IMG/VR virus record: IMGVR_UViG_3300042566_001780
Coordinates: 62,001-126,000 of that record
Length of the DNA: 64,000 nucleotides
Reading direction: 5' to 3' (one strand)
Both the position numbers and the translations under genes were made by a program. Positions 10,131 through 64,000 of this stretch are shown here, piece after piece. Each line of letters opens with the position of its first letter. Positions within the stretch are counted from its first letter, which is position 1. The notes under the pieces are model-generated. The model made no database searches. It saw nothing but the letters and a program-made list of their open reading frames with translations, and was not told where the DNA came from.

Positions 10131-11405
10131 ATGCAATTAATGGAAAATTGGACCTCTACTAAAGAGGCTCTTTTAGAAGGTTTATCTGGCACCAAGCGCC
10201 AGGTTGTTGAAACCCTTATGGAAAACCAGCGTAAGCACTTGGTGGAAACCGCTGCTGCTACTGCTACTGGTGCCGGTGCTATCGGTGACTTCCAGAAGAT
10301 CGTGATCCCGATGATCCGTCGTATCATTCCTGGTACGATTGCTCAGGATCTGGTTGGTGTTCAGCCTATGTCTGGCCCTGTTGGTTTAGTGTATTCTATG
10401 CGCTTTGCCTTCAGCGAAGCTGCTGATGCCGGCGGCGCCGCTACTACCAATGACATCGCTGCTGGTGATGAAGTGTTTGCTAACAACAGCAAGATGAAGC
10501 GTTTCTACTCGACCGCTAACGTGGGTACGACCGGCTACCCGCCTGCTCTTACTGCTGCTACGACCGCTGGTACCGCTGCTGCTCTTGCTGACTACGAAGC
10601 TTTCGGTGGTAAGGCAATGCGTCTTGCTGTTCTTAAGCAGACCGTTAGCTCTGGTTCGCGTAAGCTCCAGGCTCGTTGGTCTATGGAAGCTGCGCAAGAT
10701 CTGACCTCGCAACACGGTCTTGACCTTGAGTCCGAGATCACCGCTGCTCTGTCGGCTCAGATCGCTCATGAAATCGACAACGAAATCCTGACCGACCTTC
10801 TGTCGCTTGCTGCTACCGTGGGTACGTATGACTTTACCGCTGCTCCTACCGGTTTTGCTCCTAACTACATCGGCGATCGTTTTGCTGAACTTGGCGTGTT
10901 AGTGAACAAGCTTGCTAACGAAATCGGTGCTAAGACCCGTCGTGGCCCTGGCAACTGGTTAGTTGGTTCGCACCTGATCACCTCGATCCTCCAGTCTGCT
11001 TCTAAGTCGGTGTTTGCACCTGCTGTGCAGGGTTCGTTCGACAGCCCAACTGGCAACAAGCTCGTTGGTACCATGAACGGCCAAATGAAGGTTTACTCCT
11101 ACAACTGGGGTCTTAACGATGCTTGGACTATTGCTGATTCTGCCACCAACGCTACTGGCGCTACTGGTGAAGACATCCTCATTGGTTACAAGGGTGGTGC
11201 TTCGGAACTTGATACTGGCTACTTCTACTGCCCGTATATACCGCTTATGTCCACCGGTGTGGTGATGGATGCTCAGACATTCACTCCTGCTGTCAGCTTG
11301 TCGACCCGTTATGGTAAGGCTACCTTTACCAATACCGGCACCTCGCTTGGTAACTCGGCAGATTACTATTCGCGTTTGAGAGTGCTTAACGTGGCATTCA
11401 GCTAA
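10131..11405 (+). CDS. major capsid protein, T4 gp23-like
   Basis: LVGVQPMSGPVG, SRKLQARWSMEAAQDL, GYFYCPYIPL, STRYG; strong codon bias. Confidence 0.97.
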   Translation: MQLMENWTSTKEALLEGLSGTKRQVVETLMENQRKHLVETAAATATGAGAIGDFQKIVIPMIRRIIPGTIAQDLVGVQPMSGPVGLVYSMRFAFSEAADAGGAATTNDIAAGDEVFANNSKMKRFYSTANVGTTGYPPALTAATTAGTAAALADYEAFGGKAMRLAVLKQTVSSGSRKLQARWSMEAAQDLTSQHGLDLESEITAALSAQIAHEIDNEILTDLLSLAATVGTYDFTAAPTGFAPNYIGDRFAELGVLVNKLANEIGAKTRRGPGNWLVGSHLITSILQSASKSVFAPAVQGSFDSPTGNKLVGTMNGQMKVYSYNWGLNDAWTIADSATNATGATGEDILIGYKGGASELDTGYFYCPYIPLMSTGVVMDAQTFTPAVSLSTRYGKATFTNTGTSLGNSADYYSRLRVLNVAFS

Positions 11406-11425: not shown

Positions 11426-11452
11426 AAAAGGGGAGCTAATAGCTCCCCTTTT
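11426..11452. terminator. bidirectional terminator after major capsid gene
   Basis: AAAAGGGGAGCTA-A-TAGCTCCCCTTTT. Confidence 0.8.
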
Positions 11453-12983
11453 CTTTTTCTAATTCCTTAGCAAAATCTTTCACATGTTGGGGGCAATTTC
11501 TAATTTGCTTTGCAGCTATTACCCATCCTAATTTTGCTAGTCGTCTTGCTTCTTCTAGTGACACTAATTTCTTAATCCCATCTGGTGATTTCATCCCTAT
11601 TCTTCCAGTCGTGGTACCTCCCACAGGGAGAGTAGCACCTTCTGGAATTTCATCTACAAGTTTCTTTTTTCCATCAATCAAAATGACTTTTTTGCCTTTG
11701 TTCGATTTTTCTAAGTGAAATCCGATTTGATCTGTTTGCAAAATCTCATCAACTAGCATCCGCTTCCCATCTCTAAGTACCCATTTCTTCCCAGAAGTAG
11801 TTGAATCTTTTCTCCCAAGTCTAGACGGATTATTTGGGATTCCTCGCCGTTGCTGATTATTTTCATCAATCCACCATGTTTTGACTGGCATGAATGTCGG
11901 CAACCTGCCTTGTTTCCATCCACGTAATTGATAAAAGTCTAAAGCTTCTCTATCTATTGATAGTTCTTTAGTACCATTATTAATCCAATTATTCCCTTTA
12001 GTTGAATAATTCACATTTGGGGATTGACCTCCAATAGCTAAATTAAGACAATCATCATTTAGTAGTGTCTCTTTGCAAACTAATTCACTTTCATGTTGAA
12101 ATGCCAATTGTCGGCTTTCATGAAATTTAAGAATAGTTTTCACATGAACTTCTCTGCCGTACTTTTGAATTGAATTAATAATTCGATTTCCAGATCCAAG
12201 ATAACCATCATTTAGATCATCGGTGCTATGTACGCCATAGTAGAAACCACTATCAATAGTAGGTCTAGTGATTTTGTAAGTATAGTGAAATTGATAGTGT
12301 TTAATGTCTTTTTGTGAATCACTTATAACTAATTCCCACCTATCATGCCCAAAATCAAAAACTTTTGTCCACCCATGCTCAATCATGATTTGAGATTCAG
12401 TCTTAGCCAAATCAATTGGGCCTAATAATTTTTCTAACCTGTGCTTTTGGCATTGATGACGACTTAGAATTTGATCATCCTTCATCCAAAAATAGCCGGG
12501 TTTTGTAGCACCTAAATGGGTGAATCCGAGTTTTTCATAGACATTACCGTCTCCAATCTTCCGATCAGAATAAGTCAGCAATTTCCCATTAAGATCAGGA
12601 ATTGCAAATTTCAATAATTTGCTCGCACCACCAACAACAGCATGATTTTTTAATGAAGCTAAACGAATAATTTCAAAATTATGTTGCTGAGAAAATCTAC
12701 TTTTCCCAATAGTAAGAACCATGAATAGTTGACCACTTTTATCAACTAATCCATAGTGAAAAGATGCTGTAGCAAAACCATCTAAATGATTGTCATCCAA
12801 GAAGAATCTAGACGTTTTTGCATCGATGACTATTGCAGAAAGTTTTCTAGCGTAGATTCGCATAGATTGACCATTTTCATGATTGATCATAGACTCAATC
12901 AGAGCAGGATTATTATTTTGCTGGTGCGGCCAAATGTTTAGCTTTTCTTGTCTAGAGGGATTTTTGTAGTTTAGGAGGTTCAT
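11436..12983 (-). mobile_element. free-standing homing endonuclease: Hef-like/GNAT-like N-part fused to GIY-YIG and NUMOD-like repeats
   Basis: YARKL..FLDDNHLDG..EIIRLAS..GGASKLL..TYSDR; then YTYKIT..YYGVHS..YLGSG..LNLAIGG; WINNG-type repeats. Confidence 0.75.
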
Positions 12984-51090: not shown

Positions 51091-51141
51091 GATTGGGAAG
51101 CCCAAAAAGCGTGTTAGAATAGCTTTTTGGGCTTTTTCTTT

Positions 51142-51579
51142 ATGAAATCAAATTTAGACTCAACCTACATTAGAATGGCCATCATGATGGCAGAGAACTC
51201 TAAGGCTGTGCGTTCTAAGGTAGGCGCTATCTTGGTGACCAGCCATGGCGTTATTCTACCTGGTTATAATGGTACTGTTCGCGGACTTGACAACATTTGC
51301 GAAAACGAAGTGAATGGCGTTCTTGTTACCAAACCTGAAGTCATTCATGCTGAGCTAAATTGCATTCTTAAAGCTGCAAAAGAAGGCATTTCGATTGTAG
51401 ACTCCACCGTCTACATTACTTTGTCTCCATGCATGCAGTGCTCTGCAATGATTGCACAGAGCGGCATAAAGCGCGTAGTATTTTTGCATAAGTATCGTGA
51501 TTCTGCAGGAATTGATTTCCTTCATAAAGCCGGTGTTTCAGTTGAACATATCAACATAGATGGCAATGCAAGAAGTTGA
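51142..51579 (+). CDS. dCMP deaminase
   Basis: KVGA, GYNG, HAELN, TLSPCMQC. Confidence 0.92.
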   Translation: MKSNLDSTYIRMAIMMAENSKAVRSKVGAILVTSHGVILPGYNGTVRGLDNICENEVNGVLVTKPEVIHAELNCILKAAKEGISIVDSTVYITLSPCMQCSAMIAQSGIKRVVFLHKYRDSAGIDFLHKAGVSVEHINIDGNARS

Positions 51580-52117
51580 AAATTGGGTTGAGCTTGAAGA
51601 TCGCATTCTTCGATTTGATGGCGTGTCCATTATCTCTCCTATAGATGTACCTGCGTTTTTAATGCGTGGTGCACTCCCTAATTCTATTCGCGTCACCGAA
51701 ATCAATAAAGACATTGACTTATTCAATCAAAGCTGTCTTGAGTCAGATTTGATTGGCACTGACATTTTTGACATTCAACTATCACCCATTGAAATTTGTA
51801 TTCCAGAAAAATACAAACATTTGGATGTAGTTGAACTTATTCTCCCAAGATACAAAAAAGTTTGCCAATCATATTCAAAAGAAGAAATAGAAAAATCTGA
51901 AATTCGAATAGCTCAGGAGCTTAATGAATTTGAGCGGCGTAATATTCTTGACCTAATCAAAATCATTGCTTTTATTATTGATGAGTTTAAGCACTCAAAT
52001 CAACTTTGGGGAGTTGGTCGTGGATCTTCATGCGCCTCATATCTTCTGTTTTTGATCGGCCTTCATATGGTAGATCCTGTCAAATATGACATACCACTAT
52101 CCGAATTCTTGAAGTGA
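51560..52117 (+). CDS. DnaE (Pol III alpha)-like fragment A
   Basis: WGVGRGSSCASYLLFLIGLHMVDPVKYDI..EFL. Confidence 0.85.
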   Translation: MAMQEVENWVELEDRILRFDGVSIISPIDVPAFLMRGALPNSIRVTEINKDIDLFNQSCLESDLIGTDIFDIQLSPIEICIPEKYKHLDVVELILPRYKKVCQSYSKEEIEKSEIRIAQELNEFERRNILDLIKIIAFIIDEFKHSNQLWGVGRGSSCASYLLFLIGLHMVDPVKYDIPLSEFLK

Positions 52118-52142
52118 TCAAGAAAACAGCAAAAAATTCTTG

Positions 52143-52150
52143 CTAAATAG
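52143..52150 (+). promoter_or_regulatory. late promoter CTAAATAG
   Basis: Upstream of the GroES operon. Confidence 0.6.
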
Positions 52151-52182
52151 AGAATCCCCTATATTTTATGGAGTAATCATAG

Positions 52183-52383
52183 ATGCTCAAAACAGTTCGA
52201 AGTGCGCGTGGCACAGTTGTAGATTTTCAATTACTTGCAATTAAGTCGCAGTTGGCGGCAAAGCCTGCCCCGAAAGAAGTAATTGATCGTAAAGTGTTCA
52301 TTGAAGAACGAGACGGAGTGAAAGCTAAAAACTCCATTCCTACCACACCAGAAGAAATTATTTCTGCACCTAAGACAAAGTGA
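52183..52383 (+). CDS. conserved hypothetical protein
   Basis: RSARGTVVDF; GGAG RBS. Confidence 0.55.
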   Translation: MLKTVRSARGTVVDFQLLAIKSQLAAKPAPKEVIDRKVFIEERDGVKAKNSIPTTPEEIISAPKTK

Positions 52384-52712
52384 ATCTAATGACAAATTTA
52401 CGTCCCCTCAAAAATACTGTTCTCTTCCAATTTCTTGATGATACTGGTGGAGCAAAAGGTCGCTTCTCTGAAAGATATAACGGGTCTATTGTTATTCCGG
52501 TTCTTAACTCCAATCAAAACAAATCTTCCCGATGGGGTAAAGTTGTTAGCATTGGCCCAGAGGTTCAAGAGGTTAAAGTTGGCGACTTCATTTTGATTGA
52601 ACCTCTCCAATGGACAAACAATGAAGTTTTTGAGGGTGAGAAGATCTGGAAGACAGATGAAGGCAAGATTATGCTTTCAACAGACGACGAATCTCAAACC
52701 TATAATTTCTAA
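52380..52712 (+). CDS. GroES-like co-chaperonin
   Basis: LRPL..VL, GKVVSIGP, VKVGD. Confidence 0.8.
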   Translation: MNLMTNLRPLKNTVLFQFLDDTGGAKGRFSERYNGSIVIPVLNSNQNKSSRWGKVVSIGPEVQEVKVGDFILIEPLQWTNNEVFEGEKIWKTDEGKIMLSTDDESQTYNF

Positions 52713-52714
52713 TC

Positions 52715-53872
52715 ATGTTTTTTATTGCACTAACTTTTGCTGCGGCTTTTTTGATTGAAGGGCTCGGCACACTCGTATCCGTCATTGGATTGAGTAGCCT
52801 GTTTGGCTCAAATTTGATCATTATTGCTTTAGCAATTTCCCTAGATCTTGGGAAAATTGTTGTTGTGAGTTTGCTTTACACTTACTGGAACAAGCTTGGT
52901 GCAATCATGAAAAGCTATGCACTGGTGGCAGCAATAGTCACTATGACTATTACTTCTGCCGGTGCTGCAGGATACTTGACAGGAAAATTCCAAGAAGCTA
53001 TCCTTGGATCTCAAGAATCATCGATTAGACTCAATGCTCTTCTTGATGAGCAAAAACAATTGACTGAAAGAAAGCAGCAGATTGATGCCCAAATTGCTGC
53101 TATTCCTGATCGATATACCGCTGCCCAAAAAATTCGTTTGATGAATCAGTTTAAAGCTGAACAGACTATTGTCAATAAGCGAATTAATGAGATCACTGCA
53201 CAAGTACCAGAGCTGAAAGTTGCCGATATTAGCAAACAAGCTAAAGCTGGTCCAATTATTCTGCTTGCAAAATCATTCAACGTTACGATTGAAGAAGCTA
53301 TCCTATGGGTGGTGATGATGATCATATTCGTGTTTGATCCATTGGCTGTATTCTTGATCGTTGCTGGCAACTTCTTAGTAGCACAAAGAAAGAAAAATGA
53401 AGAAGTGGCTAAAGAAGTGGCTAAAGAAGTGGTAATTGAGCCTACAGATGCTCCATTAATTGAAGATGATGCAGCGGTGATACCACGAGCTGAAGCTATC
53501 ATTCAACCAATGATCATTGAAGAAAAACCTCAAGTTGACCTTGAATTAGTTCCTATCGAAGAAAAAGAAGAACCTATTCAAGAAGAAGTTATTTCTGAAA
53601 TTCAAAAAGTCAAGAAGCCAAGAAAACCTCGTGCTCCTAAGAAATTGAAACTGGTTCCTATTGTTGAAGAACTGCAAATTGAAGAAGAACCAGTAAAAGA
53701 GACTGTATCTAAAAGACCAGAAATTAAGTTAACTGACTTAATTCATAAAGGCCCACGCCCTGCATCAATTTTGGATGATGTTACACCGGATAATTCTGTA
53801 AAGTTTGATGAAACCCCGGATGCCAATCTGGCATCTTTCTATAAGGACCAAAAGCCTACATCCTCAAACTAA
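52715..53872 (+). CDS. membrane protein with coiled coil and acidic tail
   Basis: N-terminal TMs, IIFVFDPLAV motif. Confidence 0.6.
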   Translation: MFFIALTFAAAFLIEGLGTLVSVIGLSSLFGSNLIIIALAISLDLGKIVVVSLLYTYWNKLGAIMKSYALVAAIVTMTITSAGAAGYLTGKFQEAILGSQESSIRLNALLDEQKQLTERKQQIDAQIAAIPDRYTAAQKIRLMNQFKAEQTIVNKRINEITAQVPELKVADISKQAKAGPIILLAKSFNVTIEEAILWVVMMIIFVFDPLAVFLIVAGNFLVAQRKKNEEVAKEVAKEVVIEPTDAPLIEDDAAVIPRAEAIIQPMIIEEKPQVDLELVPIEEKEEPIQEEVISEIQKVKKPRKPRAPKKLKLVPIVEELQIEEEPVKETVSKRPEIKLTDLIHKGPRPASILDDVTPDNSVKFDETPDANLASFYKDQKPTSSN

Positions 53873-53925
53873 GATAGTTTAGCTAATTTTGAAGTTTACA
53901 ATTTTATTTTTTGGAGTTTTACATA

Positions 53926-54852
53926 ATGAGCATTTTGAAAAGTCTTTGGGTTGAAAAGCATAAACCGTCTACACTTGATGATGTCATTTTCAAAAATGAG
54001 CATGAAAAAGACATTTTTGCAAAGTTTGTTAAAAATAAATCAATCCCAAATCTTTTGCTTGTAGGCGTACAGGGCACGGGTAAAACTACGACTTCTGATG
54101 TCTTGGTCAATGAACTTGGCATTGACAAGATGGATGTACTTCGCATCAACTGCTCAGACGAAAAGATTGATGCAATGCGGGATAAGGTGAAGACATTTGC
54201 CTATACTATGCCAGTTGGTGATTTCAAGGTTGTTCAACTTGAAGAGCTTGATTATGCAGGTCCAGACGCACAGGCGCTTCTTCGAGTATTGATTGAAGAT
54301 GTTAGTGAATCTTGTCGTTTTATTGCCACGGCAAACTATGTCAATAAAATCATCCCAGCTATTCAATCTCGATTCCAAAAAGTCACATTCTCTTTGCCAA
54401 ACAAAGACGATGTTCTGATTCGAGCAGCTGATATTCTTGAAAAAGAAAAGGTTGAATTTGACATCGATGTACTTGATGAACTAGTTTGCATCACTTATCC
54501 AGATATTCGATCAACAATTACTGCACTTGAAATTTACTCTTCAGGTGGAAAGCTTGTCCTTAGTAAAGGCTCTCAATCTGGGATTGCTGACTGGAAATTT
54601 GAACTTCTGGACCTACTTGAAGCTGGTAAATTTTCAGATGCTCGAAAGCTTGTTTGCAATTCTGCAAGCAAAGAAGAATTGCAAGATATTTTCTCATTCC
54701 TCTATCAAAATTCTCATAAGCTAAAGTGTCCTCAGGATGAAGCAGTGGTGTTGATTGCAAACTATGCTTACAAACACACTTTTGTAGCTGATGCTGAATT
54801 GAATGTGGCAGCATTGATGATCGAACTGGGAATGTTGAATGGCAGCAAGTAA
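53926..54852 (+). CDS. clamp loader large subunit, T4 gp44/RFC-like
   Basis: LWVEKHKP, GVQGTGKT, IQSRF, YPDIR. Confidence 0.9.
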   Translation: MSILKSLWVEKHKPSTLDDVIFKNEHEKDIFAKFVKNKSIPNLLLVGVQGTGKTTTSDVLVNELGIDKMDVLRINCSDEKIDAMRDKVKTFAYTMPVGDFKVVQLEELDYAGPDAQALLRVLIEDVSESCRFIATANYVNKIIPAIQSRFQKVTFSLPNKDDVLIRAADILEKEKVEFDIDVLDELVCITYPDIRSTITALEIYSSGGKLVLSKGSQSGIADWKFELLDLLEAGKFSDARKLVCNSASKEELQDIFSFLYQNSHKLKCPQDEAVVLIANYAYKHTFVADAELNVAALMIELGMLNGSK

Positions 54853-55333
54853 AGAGTTTGATCTTTTTGGATTTTTGGAAAAGCTCGGTTCTCGTAGCCT
54901 AAATGCATACACTAATTTATCTGATGAAGAGAAAAAACAAGCATCTCCTCTAATTATTGCTCGTTGGCTTACTGGCACTAATGATGCTGCTCAAATCATC
55001 CGCATGAATGAAGCAGTTAATCCCTTTGTTTTTAGTTTAGGTTCGCATAAAGAGCTTCTATTCAAATTGATGGCATCTGCATCAACTGGGAATACTAGAC
55101 GTTATTCCTGGAAGAAAATGCCATCATCAAGTTCTGAAAAGCTAAAGATTGAAGTCATCAAACAGAGCCTTGGAATATCGACACGTGAAGCTAAAATGCA
55201 TGCTGATACATTCAAAGATCCTGTCCATCTGGTTCAGGCTGCTGAGGAACTTGGGTGGTCAAAAGATCAAATAAAGAAACTGCAAGGCGAATTAGGATTA
55301 GAATTACCTTCTAAGAAGGCTTCAAAGAAATGA
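54839..55333 (+). CDS. clamp loader small subunit, gp62-like
   Basis: Follows gp44; PLIIARWL..MNE..STREA. Confidence 0.65.
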   Translation: MAASKEFDLFGFLEKLGSRSLNAYTNLSDEEKKQASPLIIARWLTGTNDAAQIIRMNEAVNPFVFSLGSHKELLFKLMASASTGNTRRYSWKKMPSSSSEKLKIEVIKQSLGISTREAKMHADTFKDPVHLVQAAEELGWSKDQIKKLQGELGLELPSKKASKK

Positions 55334-56085
55334 CTGTTATGGATAGAGATGAGATCCGTCAATCTGCAAAAAGTCGTAGGTCATCTGCTACGATTGAGCA
55401 ATCTGCCTTTAAAAAGGTAGTATGGGAATGTGAATATTGCTCTCGATCATTTGCAACTGAAACAGGATTCATGGATCACCGTTGCGCAGCAAAAGCAAAG
55501 CTAGATCAATTGAAATCTCCAACCGGTCAGGCTGCGTATTCGCACTATTCTGAATGGATGAAACAGAAGGGACGAAGTGTGCCACCACCTGAAACATTTC
55601 TAGAATCACGGCAATATTCTAATTTCATACGATTTGCAGAATGGTCAAATAAACTGTCAATCCCAAATCCAAAGCAATTCATTAAATTAATGATTGAAGC
55701 AGATGTGTCACCGGTTCTATGGTGTCGGCATAATGCTTACACTATGTTCTTGGAATGGTATGATGGCGTCCATTCACCAGAAGAACAATTTATTGAATCT
55801 CTTGAAGAATTGAAACAGCTTGCGGTTGATGCTGGGTGCGGCCTTTCAGAAATTTATAATGTCTTGGGGGCAGCAGAAATTGCCAAATTGGTGCGCAAGC
55901 GAAAATTGTCGGCTTGGTTGCTAGTGACATCAAAAGTATTTTTGATGTGGGCTCAAAAATTACCGCAACATGAAAAAGACATGTTGAATGAAGCTATTGA
56001 CTTTAAAACTTTTGCAAATAAACTGGGTTCTCGCCCAGACATTACACCGCTATTCAAGAAAGCTTGTGAAAGTGAAGGAATTTAG
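55330..56085 (+). CDS. zinc-finger hypothetical replication protein
   Basis: CEYC..HRC; lies between clamp loader and DnaE fragment B. Confidence 0.55.
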   Translation: MTVMDRDEIRQSAKSRRSSATIEQSAFKKVVWECEYCSRSFATETGFMDHRCAAKAKLDQLKSPTGQAAYSHYSEWMKQKGRSVPPPETFLESRQYSNFIRFAEWSNKLSIPNPKQFIKLMIEADVSPVLWCRHNAYTMFLEWYDGVHSPEEQFIESLEELKQLAVDAGCGLSEIYNVLGAAEIAKLVRKRKLSAWLLVTSKVFLMWAQKLPQHEKDMLNEAIDFKTFANKLGSRPDITPLFKKACESEGI

Positions 56086-56677
56086 ATTTTCCTCTGGTGA
56101 TATCGACATTGATACACCTTCCTCTTTTGATCCTTGCGATTTATTCAAAAATTGGGTTAGGGCTTCTTTAGTAAAAGATGGAAAATTAGTACCACACCCA
56201 AGTGGATACTATCCATCTAATATTCCAAAGGATCCTATCACTAGTCTATCTAGTATCCCATATAACGAAGCTGAATTATTGGGATATTCAAAGATTGACT
56301 TCCTTCATCTGTCAATTTACAATTATGTCAAAGATCGAGCTGATCTTGAACAGTTAGCAAATTCACAGCCCGATTGGAATTTGCTATTGCTACCATCTGT
56401 CCAAACCAGATTATTTCAACTTTCAAATCACGGTCAATTGCTAGATGAAATAAGACCTAAAAGTATCCAAGATCTTGCAGATTGTTTGGCACTCATTCGG
56501 CCCGGCAAGAGAGAAATTCTGCCAATTTATAAAAAAGACAAACAAGTTGGAAGAAGAATGTTGTGGGCAAAGTCTGATAATGATGCATATACCTTCAAAA
56601 AATCGCATGCTATCTCATATGCACTGGTGATTGTGGTGCAATTGAATTTGATAGCCAATTCAAGGATGACATTGTGA
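56066..56677 (+). CDS. DnaE (Pol III alpha)-like fragment B, catalytic palm
   Basis: GDIDID, HPSG, KIDFLHL, ALIRPG, YTFKKSHA.SY; start uncertain. Confidence 0.85.
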   Translation: MKVKEFRFSSGDIDIDTPSSFDPCDLFKNWVRASLVKDGKLVPHPSGYYPSNIPKDPITSLSSIPYNEAELLGYSKIDFLHLSIYNYVKDRADLEQLANSQPDWNLLLLPSVQTRLFQLSNHGQLLDEIRPKSIQDLADCLALIRPGKREILPIYKKDKQVGRRMLWAKSDNDAYTFKKSHAISYALVIVVQLNLIANSRMTL

Positions 56678-56868
56678 CCGAGGAAGATTGGGGGCAGCGA
56701 GCTAAAGAGCTGATTGAAATCTTTTCAGACGACAAGATTAGTGATAAGATTGACAAGATTATGTGTCAAGGGTGCCAAAGAATTATTTTTGTTGACGCGC
56801 AAAAATGTGTACAAACCTCAAATGTAGTATTACAATCAACCCATCTCATCAACCAAGCTAAATTGATC

Positions 56869-57048
56869 ATGGCAGCAAAACAGGTAGTCTACAAAGGTCT
56901 GGTTCTCATGAAAGGCAGCACTGCACTTGAACTGTGGGATGCATGGCAGAAAGAAACGAAGGATCGAAATTCTGCCCAAAAGAAACTTGATGTCCACATG
57001 AAAGACGTTGAAACTCGTCACAAAGAACTTCTGGAGCGCTACAAATGA
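56869..57048 (+). CDS. small hypothetical protein
   Basis: Likely ATG 56869, after TACAAT at 56831. Confidence 0.5.
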   Translation: MAAKQVVYKGLVLMKGSTALELWDAWQKETKDRNSAQKKLDVHMKDVETRHKELLERYK

Positions 57049-58073
57049 ATATCCTAGCTAAAGTGTTGTACGGTTCCCACCTTTATGGGACCAACACTCC
57101 AACTTCCGATCAGGACTTCAAAATTGTCTATCTGCCAAGTTTGAAGACTGCTTTGCTTGGTCAAAAATTCAATACTGTTCGTCATCGCTATGATAAGGAT
57201 GGGAATGTTATTGCTGATAACCAAAGTATGCCGGCAGATGGATATGAGGATGAATGCATTCCTATTCAAAAGTTTGTGGCTGACTATATCAGCGGGCAGA
57301 CTTACGCAATTGAACTTGCACATGCAATTGCTAACAATGCATTTACTGGAACTGCAACTACAGAGTTTCAGGAACTTTGTCAAGATCTGGTGTTTCAATA
57401 TGCACATTCTTCTATCATGGGAATGATGGGTTTTGCAATGAAGCAGACATTTGACTATGTGATGCGCGGTGAGCGTTTGAACAAAGCTCAGCAAGTTCAT
57501 GATGTGCTTGAACGTATCATGGCAGAGAATTTCCAAACGTACACAAAGCGTCCACGCCTCGACTCTCTTCTCCCAAATGGGCTGACGGTTCTTGAAGAAG
57601 TTGCAAAAGTATGCGAACTCGAGTCTGGAATTGTTCACAGTCACGATATTCCATTCAAGACTTTGAAATTGAATGGCCGTGAGTATCTCATCACTACTAC
57701 GATCGAGAATATGATTGACGCGGCCAAGCGGCTCGTTGATCAATATGGCAATCGTTCAAATCGAGCTGCAGAAACAGAGGTTGATCCAAAATCTCTCATG
57801 CATGCAGTTCGTGTTTACGAGCAAGTGGTAGAACTTTTGACTACCGGGAAGATTGTATTTCCTCGTCAAAATGCTCAAGAGTTGCTGACAATCAAAAATC
57901 AGCAGATGAAATCCGAAGATTGCAAAAAGCTTTTGATTGCCCTGGACAAAGACGCAAATCGTATGATCGAGGAAGCAACTCTGTTGCCTAAAATGAGCCC
58001 GGAATTTCAGCAACAGATCCTGGATTATTTTTATTCCAATTATTTGCTCCCAATGTACGACTCAAATCCTTAA
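57045..58073 (+). CDS. nucleotidyltransferase (T4 NrdC.11/RlaP-like)
   Basis: YGSHLYGTNTPTSDQD; KSLMHAVR. Confidence 0.8.
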   Translation: MNILAKVLYGSHLYGTNTPTSDQDFKIVYLPSLKTALLGQKFNTVRHRYDKDGNVIADNQSMPADGYEDECIPIQKFVADYISGQTYAIELAHAIANNAFTGTATTEFQELCQDLVFQYAHSSIMGMMGFAMKQTFDYVMRGERLNKAQQVHDVLERIMAENFQTYTKRPRLDSLLPNGLTVLEEVAKVCELESGIVHSHDIPFKTLKLNGREYLITTTIENMIDAAKRLVDQYGNRSNRAAETEVDPKSLMHAVRVYEQVVELLTTGKIVFPRQNAQELLTIKNQQMKSEDCKKLLIALDKDANRMIEEATLLPKMSPEFQQQILDYFYSNYLLPMYDSNP

Positions 58074-59535: not shown

Positions 59536-60891
59536 ATGTCTATTCAAAGTATTCAAAATTTTGTTGATGTCATCAAGGCTTGTGAGTCTGCAGGTGGTGC
59601 AGGTACCAAGGATATGATTAAACAAGCCATTCAAAAAATGGATGATGGTTGTCGTGTTTTGGTGAAATATGCAATGGATCCATTCCTCGTGTTTGGTGTA
59701 AAGAAATTTGATGATCCAGTTTCTTACAGCACAGAAAATACTTTGCACGTGACTGATGTCACTGAACTTCTGGACAAACTTGCATCTCGTCAATTGACCG
59801 GTAATGCAGCCCGTAACGCTGTTACTGAGTTGATGAGCATGTTTACTCAAGACACTGCTCAATACATTGCTCGAATTATTGGCAAAGATCTTCAAGCTGG
59901 TTTTTCTGCAGATACATACAACAAGGTCTGGAAGAAAGATCAAGTTCGCGTTTTTGATGTAATGCTTGCAGATAAATGCGAGACTGAAGAAGACTTTTCC
60001 GCCATCACTTTTCCTTGTATTTCGGACACCAAACTGGACGGAGAGAGAAATATTTGCTTCCAGTTGAAGGAAGAAAGCAACTTTGCCCCTGCTGGTTCTT
60101 CTTACCGTTCGCGAAGCGGCAAAGTTGCAGCCCATATGAATGGACTGTTTGATGAAGAACTTGCACGTATTCGTGAATATCTTGGATATGACTTTGTTCT
60201 GGATGGCGAACGCATGGCGTCTAACTATATTGAAACCATCAATGCTAAGAAGTCTGGTGTTGAAGGTGAAGAAGGCAAAAAGAATATGCGATTTCATGCA
60301 TTCTTCATTATGCCACTCACTGATTGGATGAATCAAAGTTGTCCTATCACCATGGAAGAAAATCGCCAAAATCTGCAAAAGATTCTTATGGAATGTGATT
60401 GCAAAAAGATCATCCTGTCTGATGCTATCATTGTCCGTGATTATGCCCACATGCTCGAGCATCTTGATGTAGTGACTACTCCTGGATATGACGGAATGCC
60501 TAATGGACAAGAGGGCCTTATTCTGAAACGTCCTGATGCTACATATCGTTGGGATCGTTCTCTTGATTGGTGCAAAGTCAAGAAGTTCTTTGATGCCGAT
60601 GCCCGCATTGTTAGTTGGGAATATGGCAAGAAGCGTCTTGCAAATACAATGGGGCGGGTGAATACTGTTGGCTTCCTTGAAGATGGCACCCGTTTTGAAG
60701 TCGCTGTCGGTTCTGGGTGGACTGACGAAATGCGAAAAGATGTGATGGAAAACTGGGATACCAAATGGAAAGATGCCACCATTACTATCAAGTACCAAGA
60801 AGTCTCCAAAAGCAAGAATAAAGAAGTTTGCTCGCTGCGGTTTCCTACTTTCTTCCGTGGTCCTCGCGACGACAAGTTCATTGAAATCTGA
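59536..60891 (+). CDS. ATP-dependent DNA ligase
   Basis: KLDGER, SRSG, LDGE, EGLILK, WCKVK, SLRFP. Confidence 0.93.
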   Translation: MSIQSIQNFVDVIKACESAGGAGTKDMIKQAIQKMDDGCRVLVKYAMDPFLVFGVKKFDDPVSYSTENTLHVTDVTELLDKLASRQLTGNAARNAVTELMSMFTQDTAQYIARIIGKDLQAGFSADTYNKVWKKDQVRVFDVMLADKCETEEDFSAITFPCISDTKLDGERNICFQLKEESNFAPAGSSYRSRSGKVAAHMNGLFDEELARIREYLGYDFVLDGERMASNYIETINAKKSGVEGEEGKKNMRFHAFFIMPLTDWMNQSCPITMEENRQNLQKILMECDCKKIILSDAIIVRDYAHMLEHLDVVTTPGYDGMPNGQEGLILKRPDATYRWDRSLDWCKVKKFFDADARIVSWEYGKKRLANTMGRVNTVGFLEDGTRFEVAVGSGWTDEMRKDVMENWDTKWKDATITIKYQEVSKSKNKEVCSLRFPTFFRGPRDDKFIEI

Positions 60892-61376: not shown

Positions 61377-61751
61377 CCGCAGATAGAGCAATAATGCAAA
61401 ACATCTTGCATGCTGTTCAGAGAAAAATTCAGGAGTGTGAACTGATTTTTCTCCTACCTTAAAAGCAGAAATCCAACCGGTTTGGTTAACCGATAAACTG
61501 AAGGGAGCATAGTTTATTAGGCTTAATTTGTAGTCTTGCTCAAGCCGACTGATAGCATTTAAATCAGTAGTGTAGTTTTCATTACTAGATCTAAATGCAA
61601 AAGTGCGGAAGAATTCATTTAGCGAATTCTTCCGCATTGCTGTTTCCCATTCGCTAACAAGATAGTCTACAGATTCTATGAGCAAAGAATTCCATTCTTG
61701 CTCAGGATTTCTTCGGCGATCTGATAGATGAATGACATTGCTCATAATCAA
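61356..61751 (-). CDS. hypothetical protein
   Basis: MSNVIHL start, coupled to the phosphoesterase. Confidence 0.55.
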   Translation of the reverse strand: MIMSNVIHLSDRRRNPEQEWNSLLIESVDYLVSEWETAMRKNSLNEFFRTFAFRSSNENYTTDLNAISRLEQDYKLSLINYAPFSLSVNQTGWISAFKVGEKSVHTPEFFSEQHARCFALLLYLRLKAFAK

Positions 61752-62545
61752 ACATTGACAAATTTAGGTGACAAATGGTACTGATTGAAATCAGTATTCC
61801 ATTCAGAACGATATCCACAAGGGTTGCAAATGACTCTAGTACCATGCACTACTTGATCCACAGTATCATGCGTATGTCCAAAAACCCAAAGATCAGGTTT
61901 CATTTCAAGCAAGTGATCACACGGGCTCGCAAACCCTCCATCGATTTCATTACCAAATCGGGGGTGACAAAGACTCACAGATGGCATGTGGTGAGTGATG
62001 ACTATAGTCTTCTTATCCTTTGCTTTTAGATCGTTCCCCAAAAGACCTGACATTCTCTTAAATTCTTCAATCATAAAGTGAATAGAGAATTTTTGATCAT
62101 CAACGCGAATCAACCTGAAATCATTCAGTGCCCGCGACACCATAATTTGCTCAAGTGGAGTACTTCCTCCATATGACCACAGCGTAGTTATCAGAAAGTC
62201 AACATCTTCAAAGGTATATTTCAGATAACCCAAGGCCTCCTCAGAGTAAGGAGTTACGGTGTTTGAAAGGGTATTATCAAAGCTTGCAAAAATACCATTC
62301 AGCTCATGATAATCATGGCGATAGTACTCATGGTTGCCAGGTACAAAAATGACTTTCTTAAACCGACGCTCTGCTTGCTCAAGAAAATCGTGAAGCAAAT
62401 CTACATCTGAGCAAATATCACCTGCTAAAATTAGGACAGACTCTTTGTCTTTTTCTTCAAGCGGCAGAAATCTTTCCACGAGAAGAGGAATTGGCATAGA
62501 AGAAAAACCTTCAAGATGAAGGTCTGATGCTACTCGTAGTTTCAT
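61748..62545 (-). CDS. calcineurin-like metallophosphoesterase
   Basis: SDLH, LAGD, PGNHE, THH, GHTH, NPxGY. Confidence 0.9.
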   Translation of the reverse strand: MKLRVASDLHLEGFSSMPIPLLVERFLPLEEKDKESVLILAGDICSDVDLLHDFLEQAERRFKKVIFVPGNHEYYRHDYHELNGIFASFDNTLSNTVTPYSEEALGYLKYTFEDVDFLITTLWSYGGSTPLEQIMVSRALNDFRLIRVDDQKFSIHFMIEEFKRMSGLLGNDLKAKDKKTIVITHHMPSVSLCHPRFGNEIDGGFASPCDHLLEMKPDLWVFGHTHDTVDQVVHGTRVICNPCGYRSEWNTDFNQYHLSPKFVNV

Positions 62546-63477: not shown

Positions 63478-64000
63478 ATGGACATCGATCGCAAACTTGC
63501 CACTCTTCGCATTATTGACGACATTATTCCAATTGAAAAAGCTGACGCTATTGAATGCGCGGTTATCGGTGGTTGGAAAGTGGTTGTGAAGAAAAACACA
63601 TTCAAACCTGGTGACACCGCGCTTTACATTGAAATTGATGCATTCCTTCCTGAAGGAAATCCCGCTTGGCAGTTTCTTGTTGACAAGCAATCTCGCATTT
63701 TCAATGGTGTTAAGGGACATCAACTCCGCACCATTCGGCTGCGCGGTCAAATTTCTCAAGGCCTCATCCTACCTATTCATGAAATTAAGGAAGTTCAAGC
63801 AACCATTGACTTTGAAACTAATAGTGAAAAGTTGTTTGAAATGGACTTTGGACCAGTACTTGGCATTACCAAGTATGAAGCACCACTTCCGGCTGCATTG
63901 AGCGGTAAAGCTCTGGGCTTGTTCCCATCTTACATTCGTAAGACTGATGAGCCACGGTGCCAAAACATGGTTGGCGATATTTTTGGCTATGACCATCAAG
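63478..64000 (+). CDS. RNA ligase, DRB0094/Rnl5 family, 3'-truncated by window edge
   Basis: MDIDRKLATLRII..ADAIE..GWKVVVKK..YIEIDAFLP..LRGQISQGL..FPSYIRKTDE. Confidence 0.85.
   Translation, partial: MDIDRKLATLRIIDDIIPIEKADAIECAVIGGWKVVVKKNTFKPGDTALYIEIDAFLPEGNPAWQFLVDKQSRIFNGVKGHQLRTIRLRGQISQGLILPIHEIKEVQATIDFETNSEKLFEMDFGPVLGITKYEAPLPAALSGKALGLFPSYIRKTDEPRCQNMVGDIFGYDHQ

What the first reader, a model, noticed from the sequence alone, without database searches (positions are those of the whole stretch)
51560..56677. Miniature two-gene DnaE-type polymerase with no intein
Fragment A (185 aa) has the GRGS motif and ends where DnaE reads FERFL. Fragment B (~203 aa, 4 kb away) starts at DIDID and keeps HPSG, KIDFL, RPG and FKKSHA, so all three catalytic Asp positions are present. 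PHP, most of the thumb and fingers, HhH/OB and clamp-binding regions are absent (~390 aa versus over 1100 aa). B is coupled to the clamp loader and a Zn-finger gene. Similar short DnaE pieces are annotated in some jumbo myophages, but to my knowledge the function is unestablished. It may be a primer-synthesising or repair nucleotidyltransferase.
Basis: partly seen in the sequence, partly recalled or inferred. Interest (0 to 1): 0.65.

Follow-up and report, generated by a model that had tools for sequence, protein, structure and literature searches.

The report
Split minimal Pol III polymerase, already described
This freshwater giant phage encodes a stripped-down bacterial-type DNA polymerase core in two separate genes that are predicted to fit together into one active site; the arrangement was already described by computer analysis in 2021, but nobody has yet shown what it does.

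Summary
Gene A (51560-52117, 185 aa) is the first half of the Pol III alpha palm and ends exactly at E. coli residue 393. Gene B (56066-56677, 203 aa, GTG start) begins at residue 394 and carries the DxDxD and K.D catalytic motifs, a minimal finger and the steric-gate His. There is no intein, PHP, thumb, HhH/OB or clamp-binding part. Catalytic residues are invariant in about 120 diverse homologues of each half. A and B co-occur in 95 and 96 phage records. A complex prediction passes strongly (0.87 against 0.01 for the best control).

It is not new. Iyer et al. 2021 (PMC7824862) described this "minimal, split DNA polymerase III alpha" of group 2.2 (Rak2-like) jumbo phages. No experimental follow-up was found.

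The genome has its own split family B polymerase, primase, DnaB-type helicase and two DnaQ-like exonucleases, so the mini-enzyme is an accessory.

Small additions here: the exact break point, a composite active site, and a conserved Zn-finger gene just upstream of B in most relatives checked.

Best reading: a two-subunit accessory DNA polymerase for lagging-strand or gap-filling synthesis.

The parts
51560..52117 (+). Fragment A, 185 aa. Residues 77-185 are the N-terminal half of the Pol III alpha palm, with the invariant WGVGRGSSCAS loop (GS motif). Residues 1-76 are a family-specific alpha/beta domain of unknown origin that contacts B in the complex model.
   Evidence: PF07733 3.2e-9 and phrog_11127 3.9e-33. 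VIA-align Z 12.2 to E. coli Pol III alpha 277-393. R154, G155 and S156 invariant in 120 of 120 homologues. AF2 pLDDT 92.2. No PHP signal in 70 members.
56066..56677 (+). Fragment B, 203 aa from GTG 56066. It is the C-terminal half of the palm with catalytic D12/D14 (= E. coli D401/D403) and K76/D78 (= K553/D555), plus a reduced finger with LFQLS.HG, ALIRPGK and FKKSH (steric-gate His181). The thumb is deleted.
   Evidence: phrog_11778 3.7e-61. PDB profile hit to T. aquaticus Pol III alpha, 3e-6. VIA-align Z 9.5 to 3e0d 456-843. Catalytic residues in 124-125 of 125 homologues. AF2 pLDDT 91.9.
55330..56085 (+). Zn-finger protein, 251 aa, with an invariant W-x-C-x2-C...H-x-C motif and a helical domain. 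It is the conserved immediate upstream neighbour of B, overlaps B's start by 20 nt, and is a candidate accessory or DNA-binding partner. A role with A and B is inferred, not shown.
   Evidence: phrog_11058 1.1e-36. Found within 2.3 kb upstream of B in 73 of 76 related contigs that have enough flank. Found by HMM upstream of B in RsoM2USA, PA5oct, Atu_ph07, RaK2 and SCTP-2. Invariant C34, C37, H50, C52. Only a weak KIN17 Zn-finger hit, E 0.023.
53911..54852 (+). Clamp-loader large subunit (T4 gp44-like AAA+ ATPase); first gene of the overlapping gene string that includes B. Context, not part of the enzyme.
   Evidence: phrog_168 9.4e-78; Pfam AAA and Gp44_lid.
54839..55333 (+). Probable clamp-loader small subunit (gp62-like). 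It overlaps gp44 by 14 nt and ZnF by 4 nt. Context.
   Evidence: phrog_11758 5.4e-18 and phrog_225 8.4e-4. Homologues lie upstream of ZnF-B in RaK2 and Atu_ph07.
51127..51579 (+). dCMP deaminase; overlaps the start of A by 20 nt and is its conserved upstream neighbour in this clade. Context.
   Evidence: PF00383 1.4e-23 and phrog_174 6.6e-52; synteny.

Best explanation
A and B are two subunits of one enzyme: a minimal family C (Pol III alpha type) DNA polymerase core. A supplies the first half of the Pol-beta-like palm, including the GS triphosphate-binding loop. B supplies the strand with the two metal-binding aspartates, the K.D strand with the third aspartate, and a cut-down finger whose FKKSH helix carries the steric-gate histidine. 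The two chains dock non-covalently, without an intein, into a composite active site that adds dNTPs to a primer on a template. The enzyme lacks a thumb, PHP, HhH/OB and clamp-binding parts, and the phage has a complete T4-type replisome of its own. So it most likely works as an accessory, poorly processive polymerase at the fork or in repair. Candidate jobs are extending primers, filling gaps on the lagging strand, or repair synthesis. Missing DNA grip or recruitment may come from neighbours such as the conserved Zn-finger protein or the clamp loader. Shown here: homology, break point, residue conservation, co-occurrence, synteny and a predicted interface. Inferred: catalysis, dNTP preference, the partner roles and the biological job.
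For: Homology and clean break point. Catalytic and substrate residues are almost invariant over about 120 clusters per half at 36-60% identity, namely D12/D14/D16, K76/D78, R145-P146-G147, F177, K178 and H181 in B, and R154-G155-S156 in A. Rough dN/dS medians are 0.36 for A and 0.25 for B. The families are large and uniform in length: at least 413 and at least 929 clusters, medians 183 and 191 aa. Co-occurrence: 95 and 96 phage records, always on the same strand and never fused. Complex prediction: ipSAE 0.87 in three runs, best of three controls 0.01, contacts agree at 91% or more, partner pLDDT at least 87. That mark was reached by 58 of 80 solved complexes and 2 of 110 mismatched pairs. The interface puts A's 149-159 GS loop against B's 15-18 Asp strand, and B's S180 against A159, I178 and E182. 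This fits the report that E. coli S759 sits in a palm pocket (PMC8485763). Accessory status: the genome has a split PolB, a primase, a DnaB-like helicase and two DnaQ-like exonucleases, and PolB is present in all 5 complete relatives tested. Replication context: B lies in an overlapping gene string with the clamp-loader genes. In RaK2, PA5oct, Atu_ph07, Slickus01 and SCTP-2 it lies 1-3 kb upstream of the helicase gene, with the ORF before it annotated as primase in RaK2 and PA5oct. Iyer et al. 2021 reached the same general reading.
Against: No biochemical or genetic data exist for any member. The thumb and the distal fingers, which hold the primer-template in known Pol III alpha structures, are absent, so templated synthesis is unproven. 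No clamp-binding tail is visible on A, B or ZnF, and no T4-type clamp was detected in this 82%-complete record. E. coli R390 is replaced by a conserved Glu (E182 in A); the effect is unknown. The complex score may partly reflect the model's memory of single-chain DnaE folds, so it shows likeness rather than proven binding. No RNA data show expression.
Confidence: 0.6

Rival explanations
1. Primer-making enzyme: the mini-enzyme starts chains de novo or makes RNA or mixed primers for PolB.
For: Loss of the thumb and most DNA-gripping parts would suit short products. In cultured relatives B sits near the primase-helicase genes.
Against: The presumptive steric-gate His that excludes rNTPs is kept in 124 of 125 homologues, and the neighbouring Ser in 113 of 125. 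The genome and its relatives already encode a Toprim primase next to a DnaB-type helicase. To my knowledge, no family C polymerase is known to initiate de novo.
Confidence: 0.07
2. Template-independent nucleotidyltransferase: a tailing enzyme, or a nucleotide-signal synthase or other Pol-beta-fold transferase used in host-phage conflict rather than replication.
For: The retained core is essentially a Pol-beta-like nucleotidyltransferase domain. The thumb and distal fingers are gone. In this window B is followed by an RlaP-type nucleotidyltransferase with RNA ligase and phosphoesterase genes nearby.
Against: The finger motifs specific to templated Pol III alpha (LFQLS.HG, ALIRPGK, FKKSH..YA) are as invariant as the catalytic Asps. 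The RlaP neighbour is variable in position and is absent next to B in the distant cultured relatives, whereas the replication-gene context is the conserved one.
Confidence: 0.1
3. A and B do not form a pair. Each works alone or with another partner (for example B with the Zn-finger protein), or one is a non-catalytic relic.
For: The genes are never adjacent and lie from about 1.25 kb (L060) to 182 kb apart. B's conserved neighbour is ZnF rather than A.
Against: Neither half alone has a complete active site: the GS loop is in A and the Asp residues are in B. Co-occurrence is nearly perfect (95 against 96 records). Both are under constraint. The predicted interface is large, about 200 contacts, and far above the controls.
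Confidence: 0.06
4. Co-replicase: the mini-Pol III is an essential second replicative polymerase dedicated to one strand, not a minor accessory or repair enzyme.
For: It is universally retained across a very diverse clade, always alongside PolB. It is linked to clamp-loader and primase-helicase genes. Iyer et al. raise synthesis of one strand as a possibility.
Against: There is no processivity-related part and no visible clamp-binding motif, and there is no proofreading domain. T4-type PolB replisomes are known to copy both strands.
Confidence: 0.15

Closest known systems
Minimal split DNA polymerase III alpha of group 2.2 (Rak2-like) jumbo phages, Iyer et al. 2021, Viruses 13:63 (PMC7824862); PHROG families 11127 and 11778
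   Same: Same two families and same architecture: an N-terminal NTP-binding piece and a C-terminal Mg- and template-binding piece in separate, non-adjacent genes. Same company: a T4-type family B polymerase, an RFC-like clamp loader and a DnaB-type helicase. No other Pol III domains are present.
   Different: This copy comes from an uncultured freshwater phage and is at most 47% (B) and 38% (A) identical to the cultured-phage versions. Here A and B are only 4 kb apart, within a conserved block (dCMP deaminase, A, three genes, gp44, gp62, ZnF, B).
Bacterial Pol III alpha / DnaE (E. coli 2HNH, T. aquaticus 3E0D, M. tuberculosis DnaE1) and PolC (3F2B)
   Same: Pol-beta-like palm, GS loop, catalytic Asp triad, K553 equivalent, RPG and FNKSH-type finger motifs, and the steric-gate His. 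The fold matches over E. coli residues 277-786.
   Different: 388 aa in two chains against about 1160 aa in one. No PHP, thumb, distal fingers, HhH beta-binding domain, OB or tau-binding tail. An extra 76-aa N-terminal domain on A. R390 is replaced by Glu.
Cyanobacterial split-intein DnaE (DnaE-N and DnaE-C joined by protein trans-splicing)
   Same: A DnaE-type polymerase encoded by two distant genes.
   Different: No intein is present here: A and B are fully accounted for by palm and finger residues that abut at E. coli 393|394. From my own knowledge, untested here, the cyanobacterial split lies just before the FNKSH motif, at a different site, and the product is a full-length DnaE.
Bacillus subtilis DnaE working beside PolC (functional analogy only, from established knowledge)
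   Same: A non-proofreading family C polymerase acts as a second polymerase that extends primers before hand-off to the main replicase. This is a possible model for the mini-Pol III beside PolB.
   Different: B. subtilis DnaE is full length and binds the clamp. The analogy is untested for the phage enzyme.

Membership tests
Family C DNA polymerase catalytic core (Pol III alpha / DnaE / PolC) | Pol-beta-like palm with the GS (RGS) triphosphate-binding loop | tested here: met
   PF07733 37.2 bits against a cut-off of 23.9. All 70 members tested match PF07733. R154-G155-S156 are invariant in 120 of 120. VIA-align Z 12.2, rmsd 2.4 A, to E. coli 277-393.
Family C DNA polymerase catalytic core (Pol III alpha / DnaE / PolC) | Three catalytic aspartates (E. 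coli D401, D403, D555) | tested here: met
   B D12 and D14 in 124 of 125 homologues; the one gap is a mis-started annotation in Atu_ph07. D78 in 125 of 125. Alignment to T. aquaticus PDIDTDF and LKMDFLGL.
Family C DNA polymerase catalytic core (Pol III alpha / DnaE / PolC) | Finger domain with RPG and FNKSH motifs, including the steric-gate His | tested here: met
   Motifs are invariant and aligned to T. aquaticus 608-721 and 809-824. Only about half of the fingers are present. Pfam PF17657 scores 20.6 bits, just under its cut-off of 22.
Family C DNA polymerase catalytic core (Pol III alpha / DnaE / PolC) | N-terminal PHP domain | tested here: not met
   No PF02811 match in A, in the whole genome or in 5 complete relatives.
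Family C DNA polymerase catalytic core (Pol III alpha / DnaE / PolC) | Thumb, HhH beta-binding domain and OB / C-terminal tail | tested here: not met
   B residues 17-43 replace E. coli residues about 406-510, and B ends at E. coli 786. No PF14579 match in this genome or in 4 relatives.
Family C DNA polymerase catalytic core (Pol III alpha / DnaE / PolC) | Template-directed DNA polymerase activity | not testable with these tools
   Needs a primer-extension assay with purified A and B.
Split minimal Pol III alpha of group 2.2 jumbo phages (Iyer et al. 2021) | Two stand-alone proteins, an N-terminal NTP-binding part and a C-terminal Mg- and template-binding part, from non-adjacent genes | tested here: met
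   A-B spacing is 4 kb here, and 1.25-9.5 kb in 46 related contigs (9.5 kb being close to the 10-kb flank limit of that scan). It is 4.7-182 kb in isolates.
Split minimal Pol III alpha of group 2.2 jumbo phages (Iyer et al. 2021) | Accompanied by a T4-type family B polymerase and replisome, with no other Pol III domains | tested here: met
   PolB, primase, helicase and clamp loader are present. PHP and HhH are absent. Caveat: the record is about 82% complete, and no clamp was detected.
Split minimal Pol III alpha of group 2.2 jumbo phages (Iyer et al. 2021) | The two proteins reconstitute one enzyme | tested here: inconclusive
   The prediction passes (0.87 against 0.01 for the best control), and co-occurrence is 95 against 96 records. 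No physical evidence exists.
Split-intein DnaE | Intein halves flanking the break point | tested here: not met
   A ends at E. coli 393 and B starts at 394, with only 3 unaligned residues at the start of B. No extra sequence is available for intein blocks.

The most novel reading that the evidence does not exclude
The A-B heterodimer, possibly with the always-adjacent Zn-finger protein as a DNA-binding third subunit, is the smallest natural templated family C polymerase. It would serve as a dedicated primer-extension or lagging-strand polymerase that hands off to PolB. That would make a hybrid replisome joining a bacterial-type C-family enzyme to an archaeo-eukaryotic-type B-family enzyme, comparable to DnaE/PolC in Bacillus or Pol alpha/Pol delta in eukaryotes.
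Probability: 0.2. Interest if true: 0.75.

Novelty: new member of a known kind. Interest (0 to 1): 0.35.

Why it matters
If active, the pair would define the minimal functional core of the bacterial replicase family: about 390 residues with no thumb. It would also show that a T4-type replisome can use a second, unrelated polymerase. That bears on how family C polymerases arose (Iyer et al. treat this form as a model of the ancestral state), and it would give a compact two-piece polymerase scaffold. The family is very common in environmental phages (at least 900 sequence clusters), yet it has no experimental characterisation. As a discovery it is not new; its value is as a well-defined and easily testable open question.

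Tried and rejected
1. Near-identical DNA in cultured phages: none found (megablast). The nearest protein matches are below 60% identity.
2. A residues 1-76 as a vestige of the PHP barrel: no PF02811 signal in any of 70 members. The atlas search gave only its own family and weak generic beta-alpha-beta matches.
3. Zn-finger protein as a missing DnaE domain: the profile search of PDB gave only a weak KIN17 zinc-finger hit (E 0.023), and the atlas gave only phage hypothetical proteins.
4. Natural fusion as a functional clue: P0110 (278 aa) has an N-terminal extension with no significant family here and comes from a 2.6-kb contig. It is not informative.
5. Fused A-B proteins: none among 80 related contigs or the cultured phages. 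In the closest case, L060, two ORFs (81 and 192 aa) still separate them. The word search cannot see proteins of about 390 aa (length window), and I ran no further search on this, so absence of fusions is not established.
6. Clamp-binding tail on A, B or ZnF: none seen, whereas PolB-C ends in a hydrophobic SVFKF tail.
7. T4 gp45 clamp: not detected with PF09116 or PF02916. It may be too divergent, or it may lie in the missing 18% of the record.
8. Expression: no RNA run holds the sequence, only lake, freshwater and wastewater DNA metagenomes. Read laying was not used, because contigs cannot show expression.
9. Promoter and terminator scan: not clearly above shuffles, so not used.
10. dN/dS: mostly saturated, so only a rough indication. 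The first attempt timed out.

Full report
WHAT IS THERE

The window is bases 62001-126000 of a 291,687-bp IMG/VR virus record, estimated at about 82% complete. Public runs that hold it are lake, freshwater and wastewater DNA metagenomes.

Fragment A (51560-52117, +, 185 aa) matches Pfam PF07733 (DNA_pol3_alpha, 3.2e-9, above the cut-off) over residues 99-184. It also matches the small PHROG family 11127, annotated "DNA polymerase" (171 positions, 3.9e-33).

Fragment B lies in the ORF 55988-56677 and matches PHROG 11778 (197 positions, 3.7e-61) from residue 36 of that ORF. Homologues are 187-208 aa, median 191. The only in-frame starts close to the conserved DIDID motif are GTG 56066 and GTG 56072. 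I therefore take GTG 56066 as the start, giving 203 aa and a 20-nt overlap with the stop of the upstream gene.

MAPPING TO KNOWN POLYMERASES

- Sequence, A: a profile of 70 A homologues aligns positions 106-181 to E. coli Pol III alpha 317-392. The alignment includes GPGRGSGAGS and ends at FERFL.
- Sequence, B: a profile of 65 B homologues aligns to T. aquaticus Pol III alpha at 462 (PDIDTDF), at 608-721 (LKMDFLGL ... FQLES ... YRPG) and at 809-824 (YGFNKSHAAAY).
- Models: the AlphaFold2 models are confident, with pLDDT 92.2 and 91.9. For both, all top Foldseek hits are family C polymerases.
- Structure, A: VIA-align places A 77-185 on E. coli 277-393 (Z 12.2, rmsd 2.4 A, 104 residues aligned).
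- Structure, B: VIA-align places B 4-203 on T. aquaticus 455-843 (Z 9.5, rmsd 4.9 A, 198 residues aligned) and on E. coli 394-786.

The gene break therefore falls between E. coli residues 393 and 394, eight residues before the first catalytic aspartate. Nothing is missing or duplicated, and there is no room for intein halves. About 27 residues of B replace the roughly 105-residue thumb, about 90 finger residues between the RPG and FNKSH motifs are deleted, and everything after E. coli 786 is absent. PHP (PF02811) and the HhH beta-binding domain (PF14579) are found nowhere in this genome. Neither was found in any complete cultured relative tested: five for PHP, four for HhH. So they are not hidden as further fragments. 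A residues 1-76 form a confident small alpha/beta domain with no detectable relative outside the family.

IS IT FUNCTIONAL?

Both families are large. There are at least 413 (A) and at least 929 (B) clusters at 90% identity, nearly all from metagenomes, and their length is strikingly constant.

Across about 120 clusters of each (36-75% identity to the query) the following are kept:

| Fragment | Residue(s) | E. coli equivalent | Kept in |
|---|---|---|---|
| B | D12, D14, D16 | D401, D403, D405 | 124 of 125 |
| B | K76, D78 | K553, D555 | 125 of 125 |
| B | R145, P146 | FRPGP motif | 125 of 125 |
| B | F177, K178 | F756, N757 | 125 of 125 |
| B | H181 | H760 | 124 of 125 |
| B | S180 | S759 | 113 of 125 |
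| A | R154, G155, S156 | R362, G363, S364 | 120 of 120 |

The single gap at D12-D16 is an annotation error in Atu_ph07. Its deposited CDS starts too late, and the upstream in-frame sequence reads MKNIPDIDIDF directly after a stop codon.

[quoted passage not shown] Rough dN/dS medians of 0.36 (A), 0.25 (B) and 0.43 (the Zn-finger gene) fit purifying selection, although most pairs are saturated.

DO A AND B WORK TOGETHER?

- Neither half has a complete active site. The GS loop is in A; all three aspartates and the finger motifs are in B.
- In the cultured-phage collection A is found in 95 records and B in 96, from the same host genera. In every record checked the two are on the same strand.
- They are never adjacent. 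Spacing is 4.7 kb in RsoM2USA, 11 kb in Slickus01 and 15 kb in XacN1. It is 31-34 kb in 121Q, RaK2 and GAP32, 44 kb in PA5oct, 116 kb in SCTP-2 and 182 kb in Atu_ph07.
- The single complex job gave ipSAE 0.87 in each of three runs against 0.01 for the best of three controls. Contacts agreed at 91% or more, and partner pLDDT was at least 87. That mark was reached by 58 of 80 solved complexes and 2 of 110 mismatched pairs, and those counts hold only roughly because my own alignments were used.
- The lowest-error contacts place A's WGVGRGSS loop (149-159) against B's Asp strand (15-18). They place B's S180 against A's A159, I178 and E182. This echoes the published observation that E. coli S759 fits a pocket of the palm.
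- A's N-terminal domain (residues 6-23, 33-42 and 74-81) also contacts B.
- Caveat from the tool: because single-chain DnaE structures exist, a pass shows likeness to that fold, not proven binding.

GENOMIC CONTEXT

In the window, gp44-like (53911-54852), gp62-like (54839-55333), Zn-finger (55330-56085), B (56066-56677), orf124 (56674-57048) and an RlaP-type nucleotidyltransferase (57045-58073) all overlap start-to-stop. A's start overlaps the end of a dCMP deaminase gene.

Among the 80 best IMG/VR relatives of B, one gene order recurs: dCMP deaminase, A, orf66, GroES-like, a 385-aa membrane or coiled-coil protein, gp44, gp62, ZnF, B. A was found 4.2-9.5 kb upstream of B in 45 contigs and 1.25 kb upstream in one. 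The 9.5-kb figure is close to the 10-kb flank limit of that scan. In that one contig, L060, A lies directly after ZnF, but two ORFs still separate it from B.

The Zn-finger gene lies within 2.3 kb upstream of B in 73 of the 76 contigs with enough flank. A profile HMM finds it upstream of B in RsoM2USA, PA5oct, Atu_ph07, RaK2 and SCTP-2, but not in XacN1 or Slickus01. In RaK2, PA5oct, Atu_ph07, Slickus01 and SCTP-2, B is followed within 1-3 kb by the helicase gene. The ORF just before the helicase is annotated as primase in RaK2 and PA5oct. ZnF-B linkage is thus ancient, while A moves about. Iyer et al. do not mention this neighbour.

THE REST OF THE REPLICATION MACHINERY

The genome encodes the following:
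- a T4-type family B polymerase, itself split into 597-aa and 396-aa genes with a 101-aa ORF between them;
- a Toprim primase (345 aa) next to a DnaB-like helicase (448 aa);
- two DnaQ-like exonucleases in the PHROG family called "DNA polymerase exonuclease subunit";
- the clamp loader;
- an ATP-dependent DNA ligase (59536-60891).

PolB is present in all five complete relatives tested, including the 141-kb Alishewanella phage, which is not a jumbo phage. The mini-enzyme is therefore neither the only polymerase nor the primase.

WHAT IS ALREADY KNOWN

Iyer et al. [quoted passage not shown] They suggest it may cooperate with PolB in synthesis of one strand or in repair, and they treat it as a model of the ancestral enzyme. 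The Atu_ph07 paper (PMC6102473) had already annotated a Pol III alpha subunit and an epsilon subunit as conserved in Rak2-like phages. My literature searches found no biochemical or genetic follow-up. The finding is thus a new, uncultured member of a described kind.

MOST LIKELY MECHANISM

A and B dock non-covalently into a two-chain minimal family C polymerase that adds dNTPs to a primer on a template. The conserved steric-gate His and the separate primase argue against RNA priming. The invariant template- and dNTP-contacting finger motifs argue against a template-independent transferase. Lacking a thumb, a clamp-binding part and proofreading, the enzyme should be distributive and dependent on partners. 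The linked Zn-finger protein, the clamp loader and the DnaQ-like exonucleases are candidates, but that is inference only. I put 0.6 on "heterodimeric accessory DNA polymerase acting beside PolB". Within that, the specific job (primer extension and hand-off, gap filling, or repair) is open.

LIMITS

- There are no expression data.
- No clamp was detected.
- The record is about 82% complete.
- Absence of fused forms is not established, because the word search is bounded by length and I did not run the costly exhaustive search.
- Only one complex job was available, so A+B+ZnF was not tested.

Noticed in passing
G000:C1:54504-57896, minus strand (just upstream of the window; loci L002 and L003): The T4-type family B DNA polymerase is also split into two genes: 597 aa matching phrog_262 positions 7-498, and 396 aa matching positions 570-840. 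A 101-aa ORF of unknown function lies between them. PolB also appears split in Atu_ph07, Slickus01 and PA5oct. So this phage carries two different split polymerases.
   Followed up: partly
window 55330-56085 (+): A phage-specific Zn-finger protein (phrog_11058; invariant W32, C34, C37, H50, C52) is the conserved upstream neighbour of B in five of seven cultured relatives checked. Its function is unknown, and the only lead is a weak KIN17 zinc-finger similarity (E 0.023). Iyer et al. 2021 do not mention it.
   Followed up: partly
L086:5983-6558 (Agrobacterium phage Atu_ph07, NC_042013.1, gp074): The deposited CDS for the B homologue (164 aa) starts downstream of the catalytic DxDxD motif. An in-frame ATG just after a stop codon gives MKNIPDIDIDF..., so the annotated start is probably too late.
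   Followed up: yes
L060:8002-10564 (IMGVR_UViG_3300044910_000908): A variant gene order. A has moved to sit directly after ZnF (4-nt overlap) and only 1.25 kb upstream of B, but two unknown ORFs (81 and 192 aa) still separate the halves. This is the closest A-B arrangement seen.
   Followed up: partly
window 57045-58073 (+), 59536-60891 (+), 61748-62545 (-), 63478-63999 (+, runs off the window): Downstream of B lie an RlaP-type (RNA repair pathway) nucleotidyltransferase, an ATP-dependent DNA ligase, a metallophosphoesterase and an RNA ligase. Together they look like a nucleic-acid repair cluster.
   Followed up: no
window 10131-11405 (+) and 11436-12983 (-): The GC-rich stretch with strongly negative AT skew (GC 0.47 against about 0.39 elsewhere) is the major head protein gene (phrog_138, 1.8e-84). 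A 515-aa homing/HNH endonuclease gene sits next to it on the opposite strand.
   Followed up: partly
window 54839-54890 (+), N-terminus of the gp62-like protein; PolB C-fragment C-terminus at G000:C1:54504: The gp62-like protein starts MAASKEFDLFGFLEKL, and the PolB C-fragment ends ...SYINSVFKF. Both are hydrophobic F-rich termini reminiscent of T4/RB69 clamp-interaction tails. A, B and ZnF have nothing similar. Speculative.
   Followed up: no
window 51560-52117 (secondary PHROG hits): A's GS-motif region also matches the C-terminal ends of two phage families of about 460 aa: phrog_7513 at positions 371-439 of 461, and phrog_13169 at 333-408 of 463. This suggests that other phages may carry longer N-terminal DnaE fragments ending near the same break point.
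   Followed up: no
whole genome G000: No T4 gp45-type sliding clamp was detected with PF09116 or PF02916, despite a clear clamp loader. The clamp may be too divergent, or it may lie in the missing 18% of the record or so.
   Followed up: partly
window 52380-52712 (+) and 52715-53872 (+): Between A and the clamp loader lie a GroES-like protein (Cpn10, 4.2e-5) and a 385-aa protein with N-terminal hydrophobic segments and a charged repetitive tail. Both keep this position across the related contigs.
   Followed up: no
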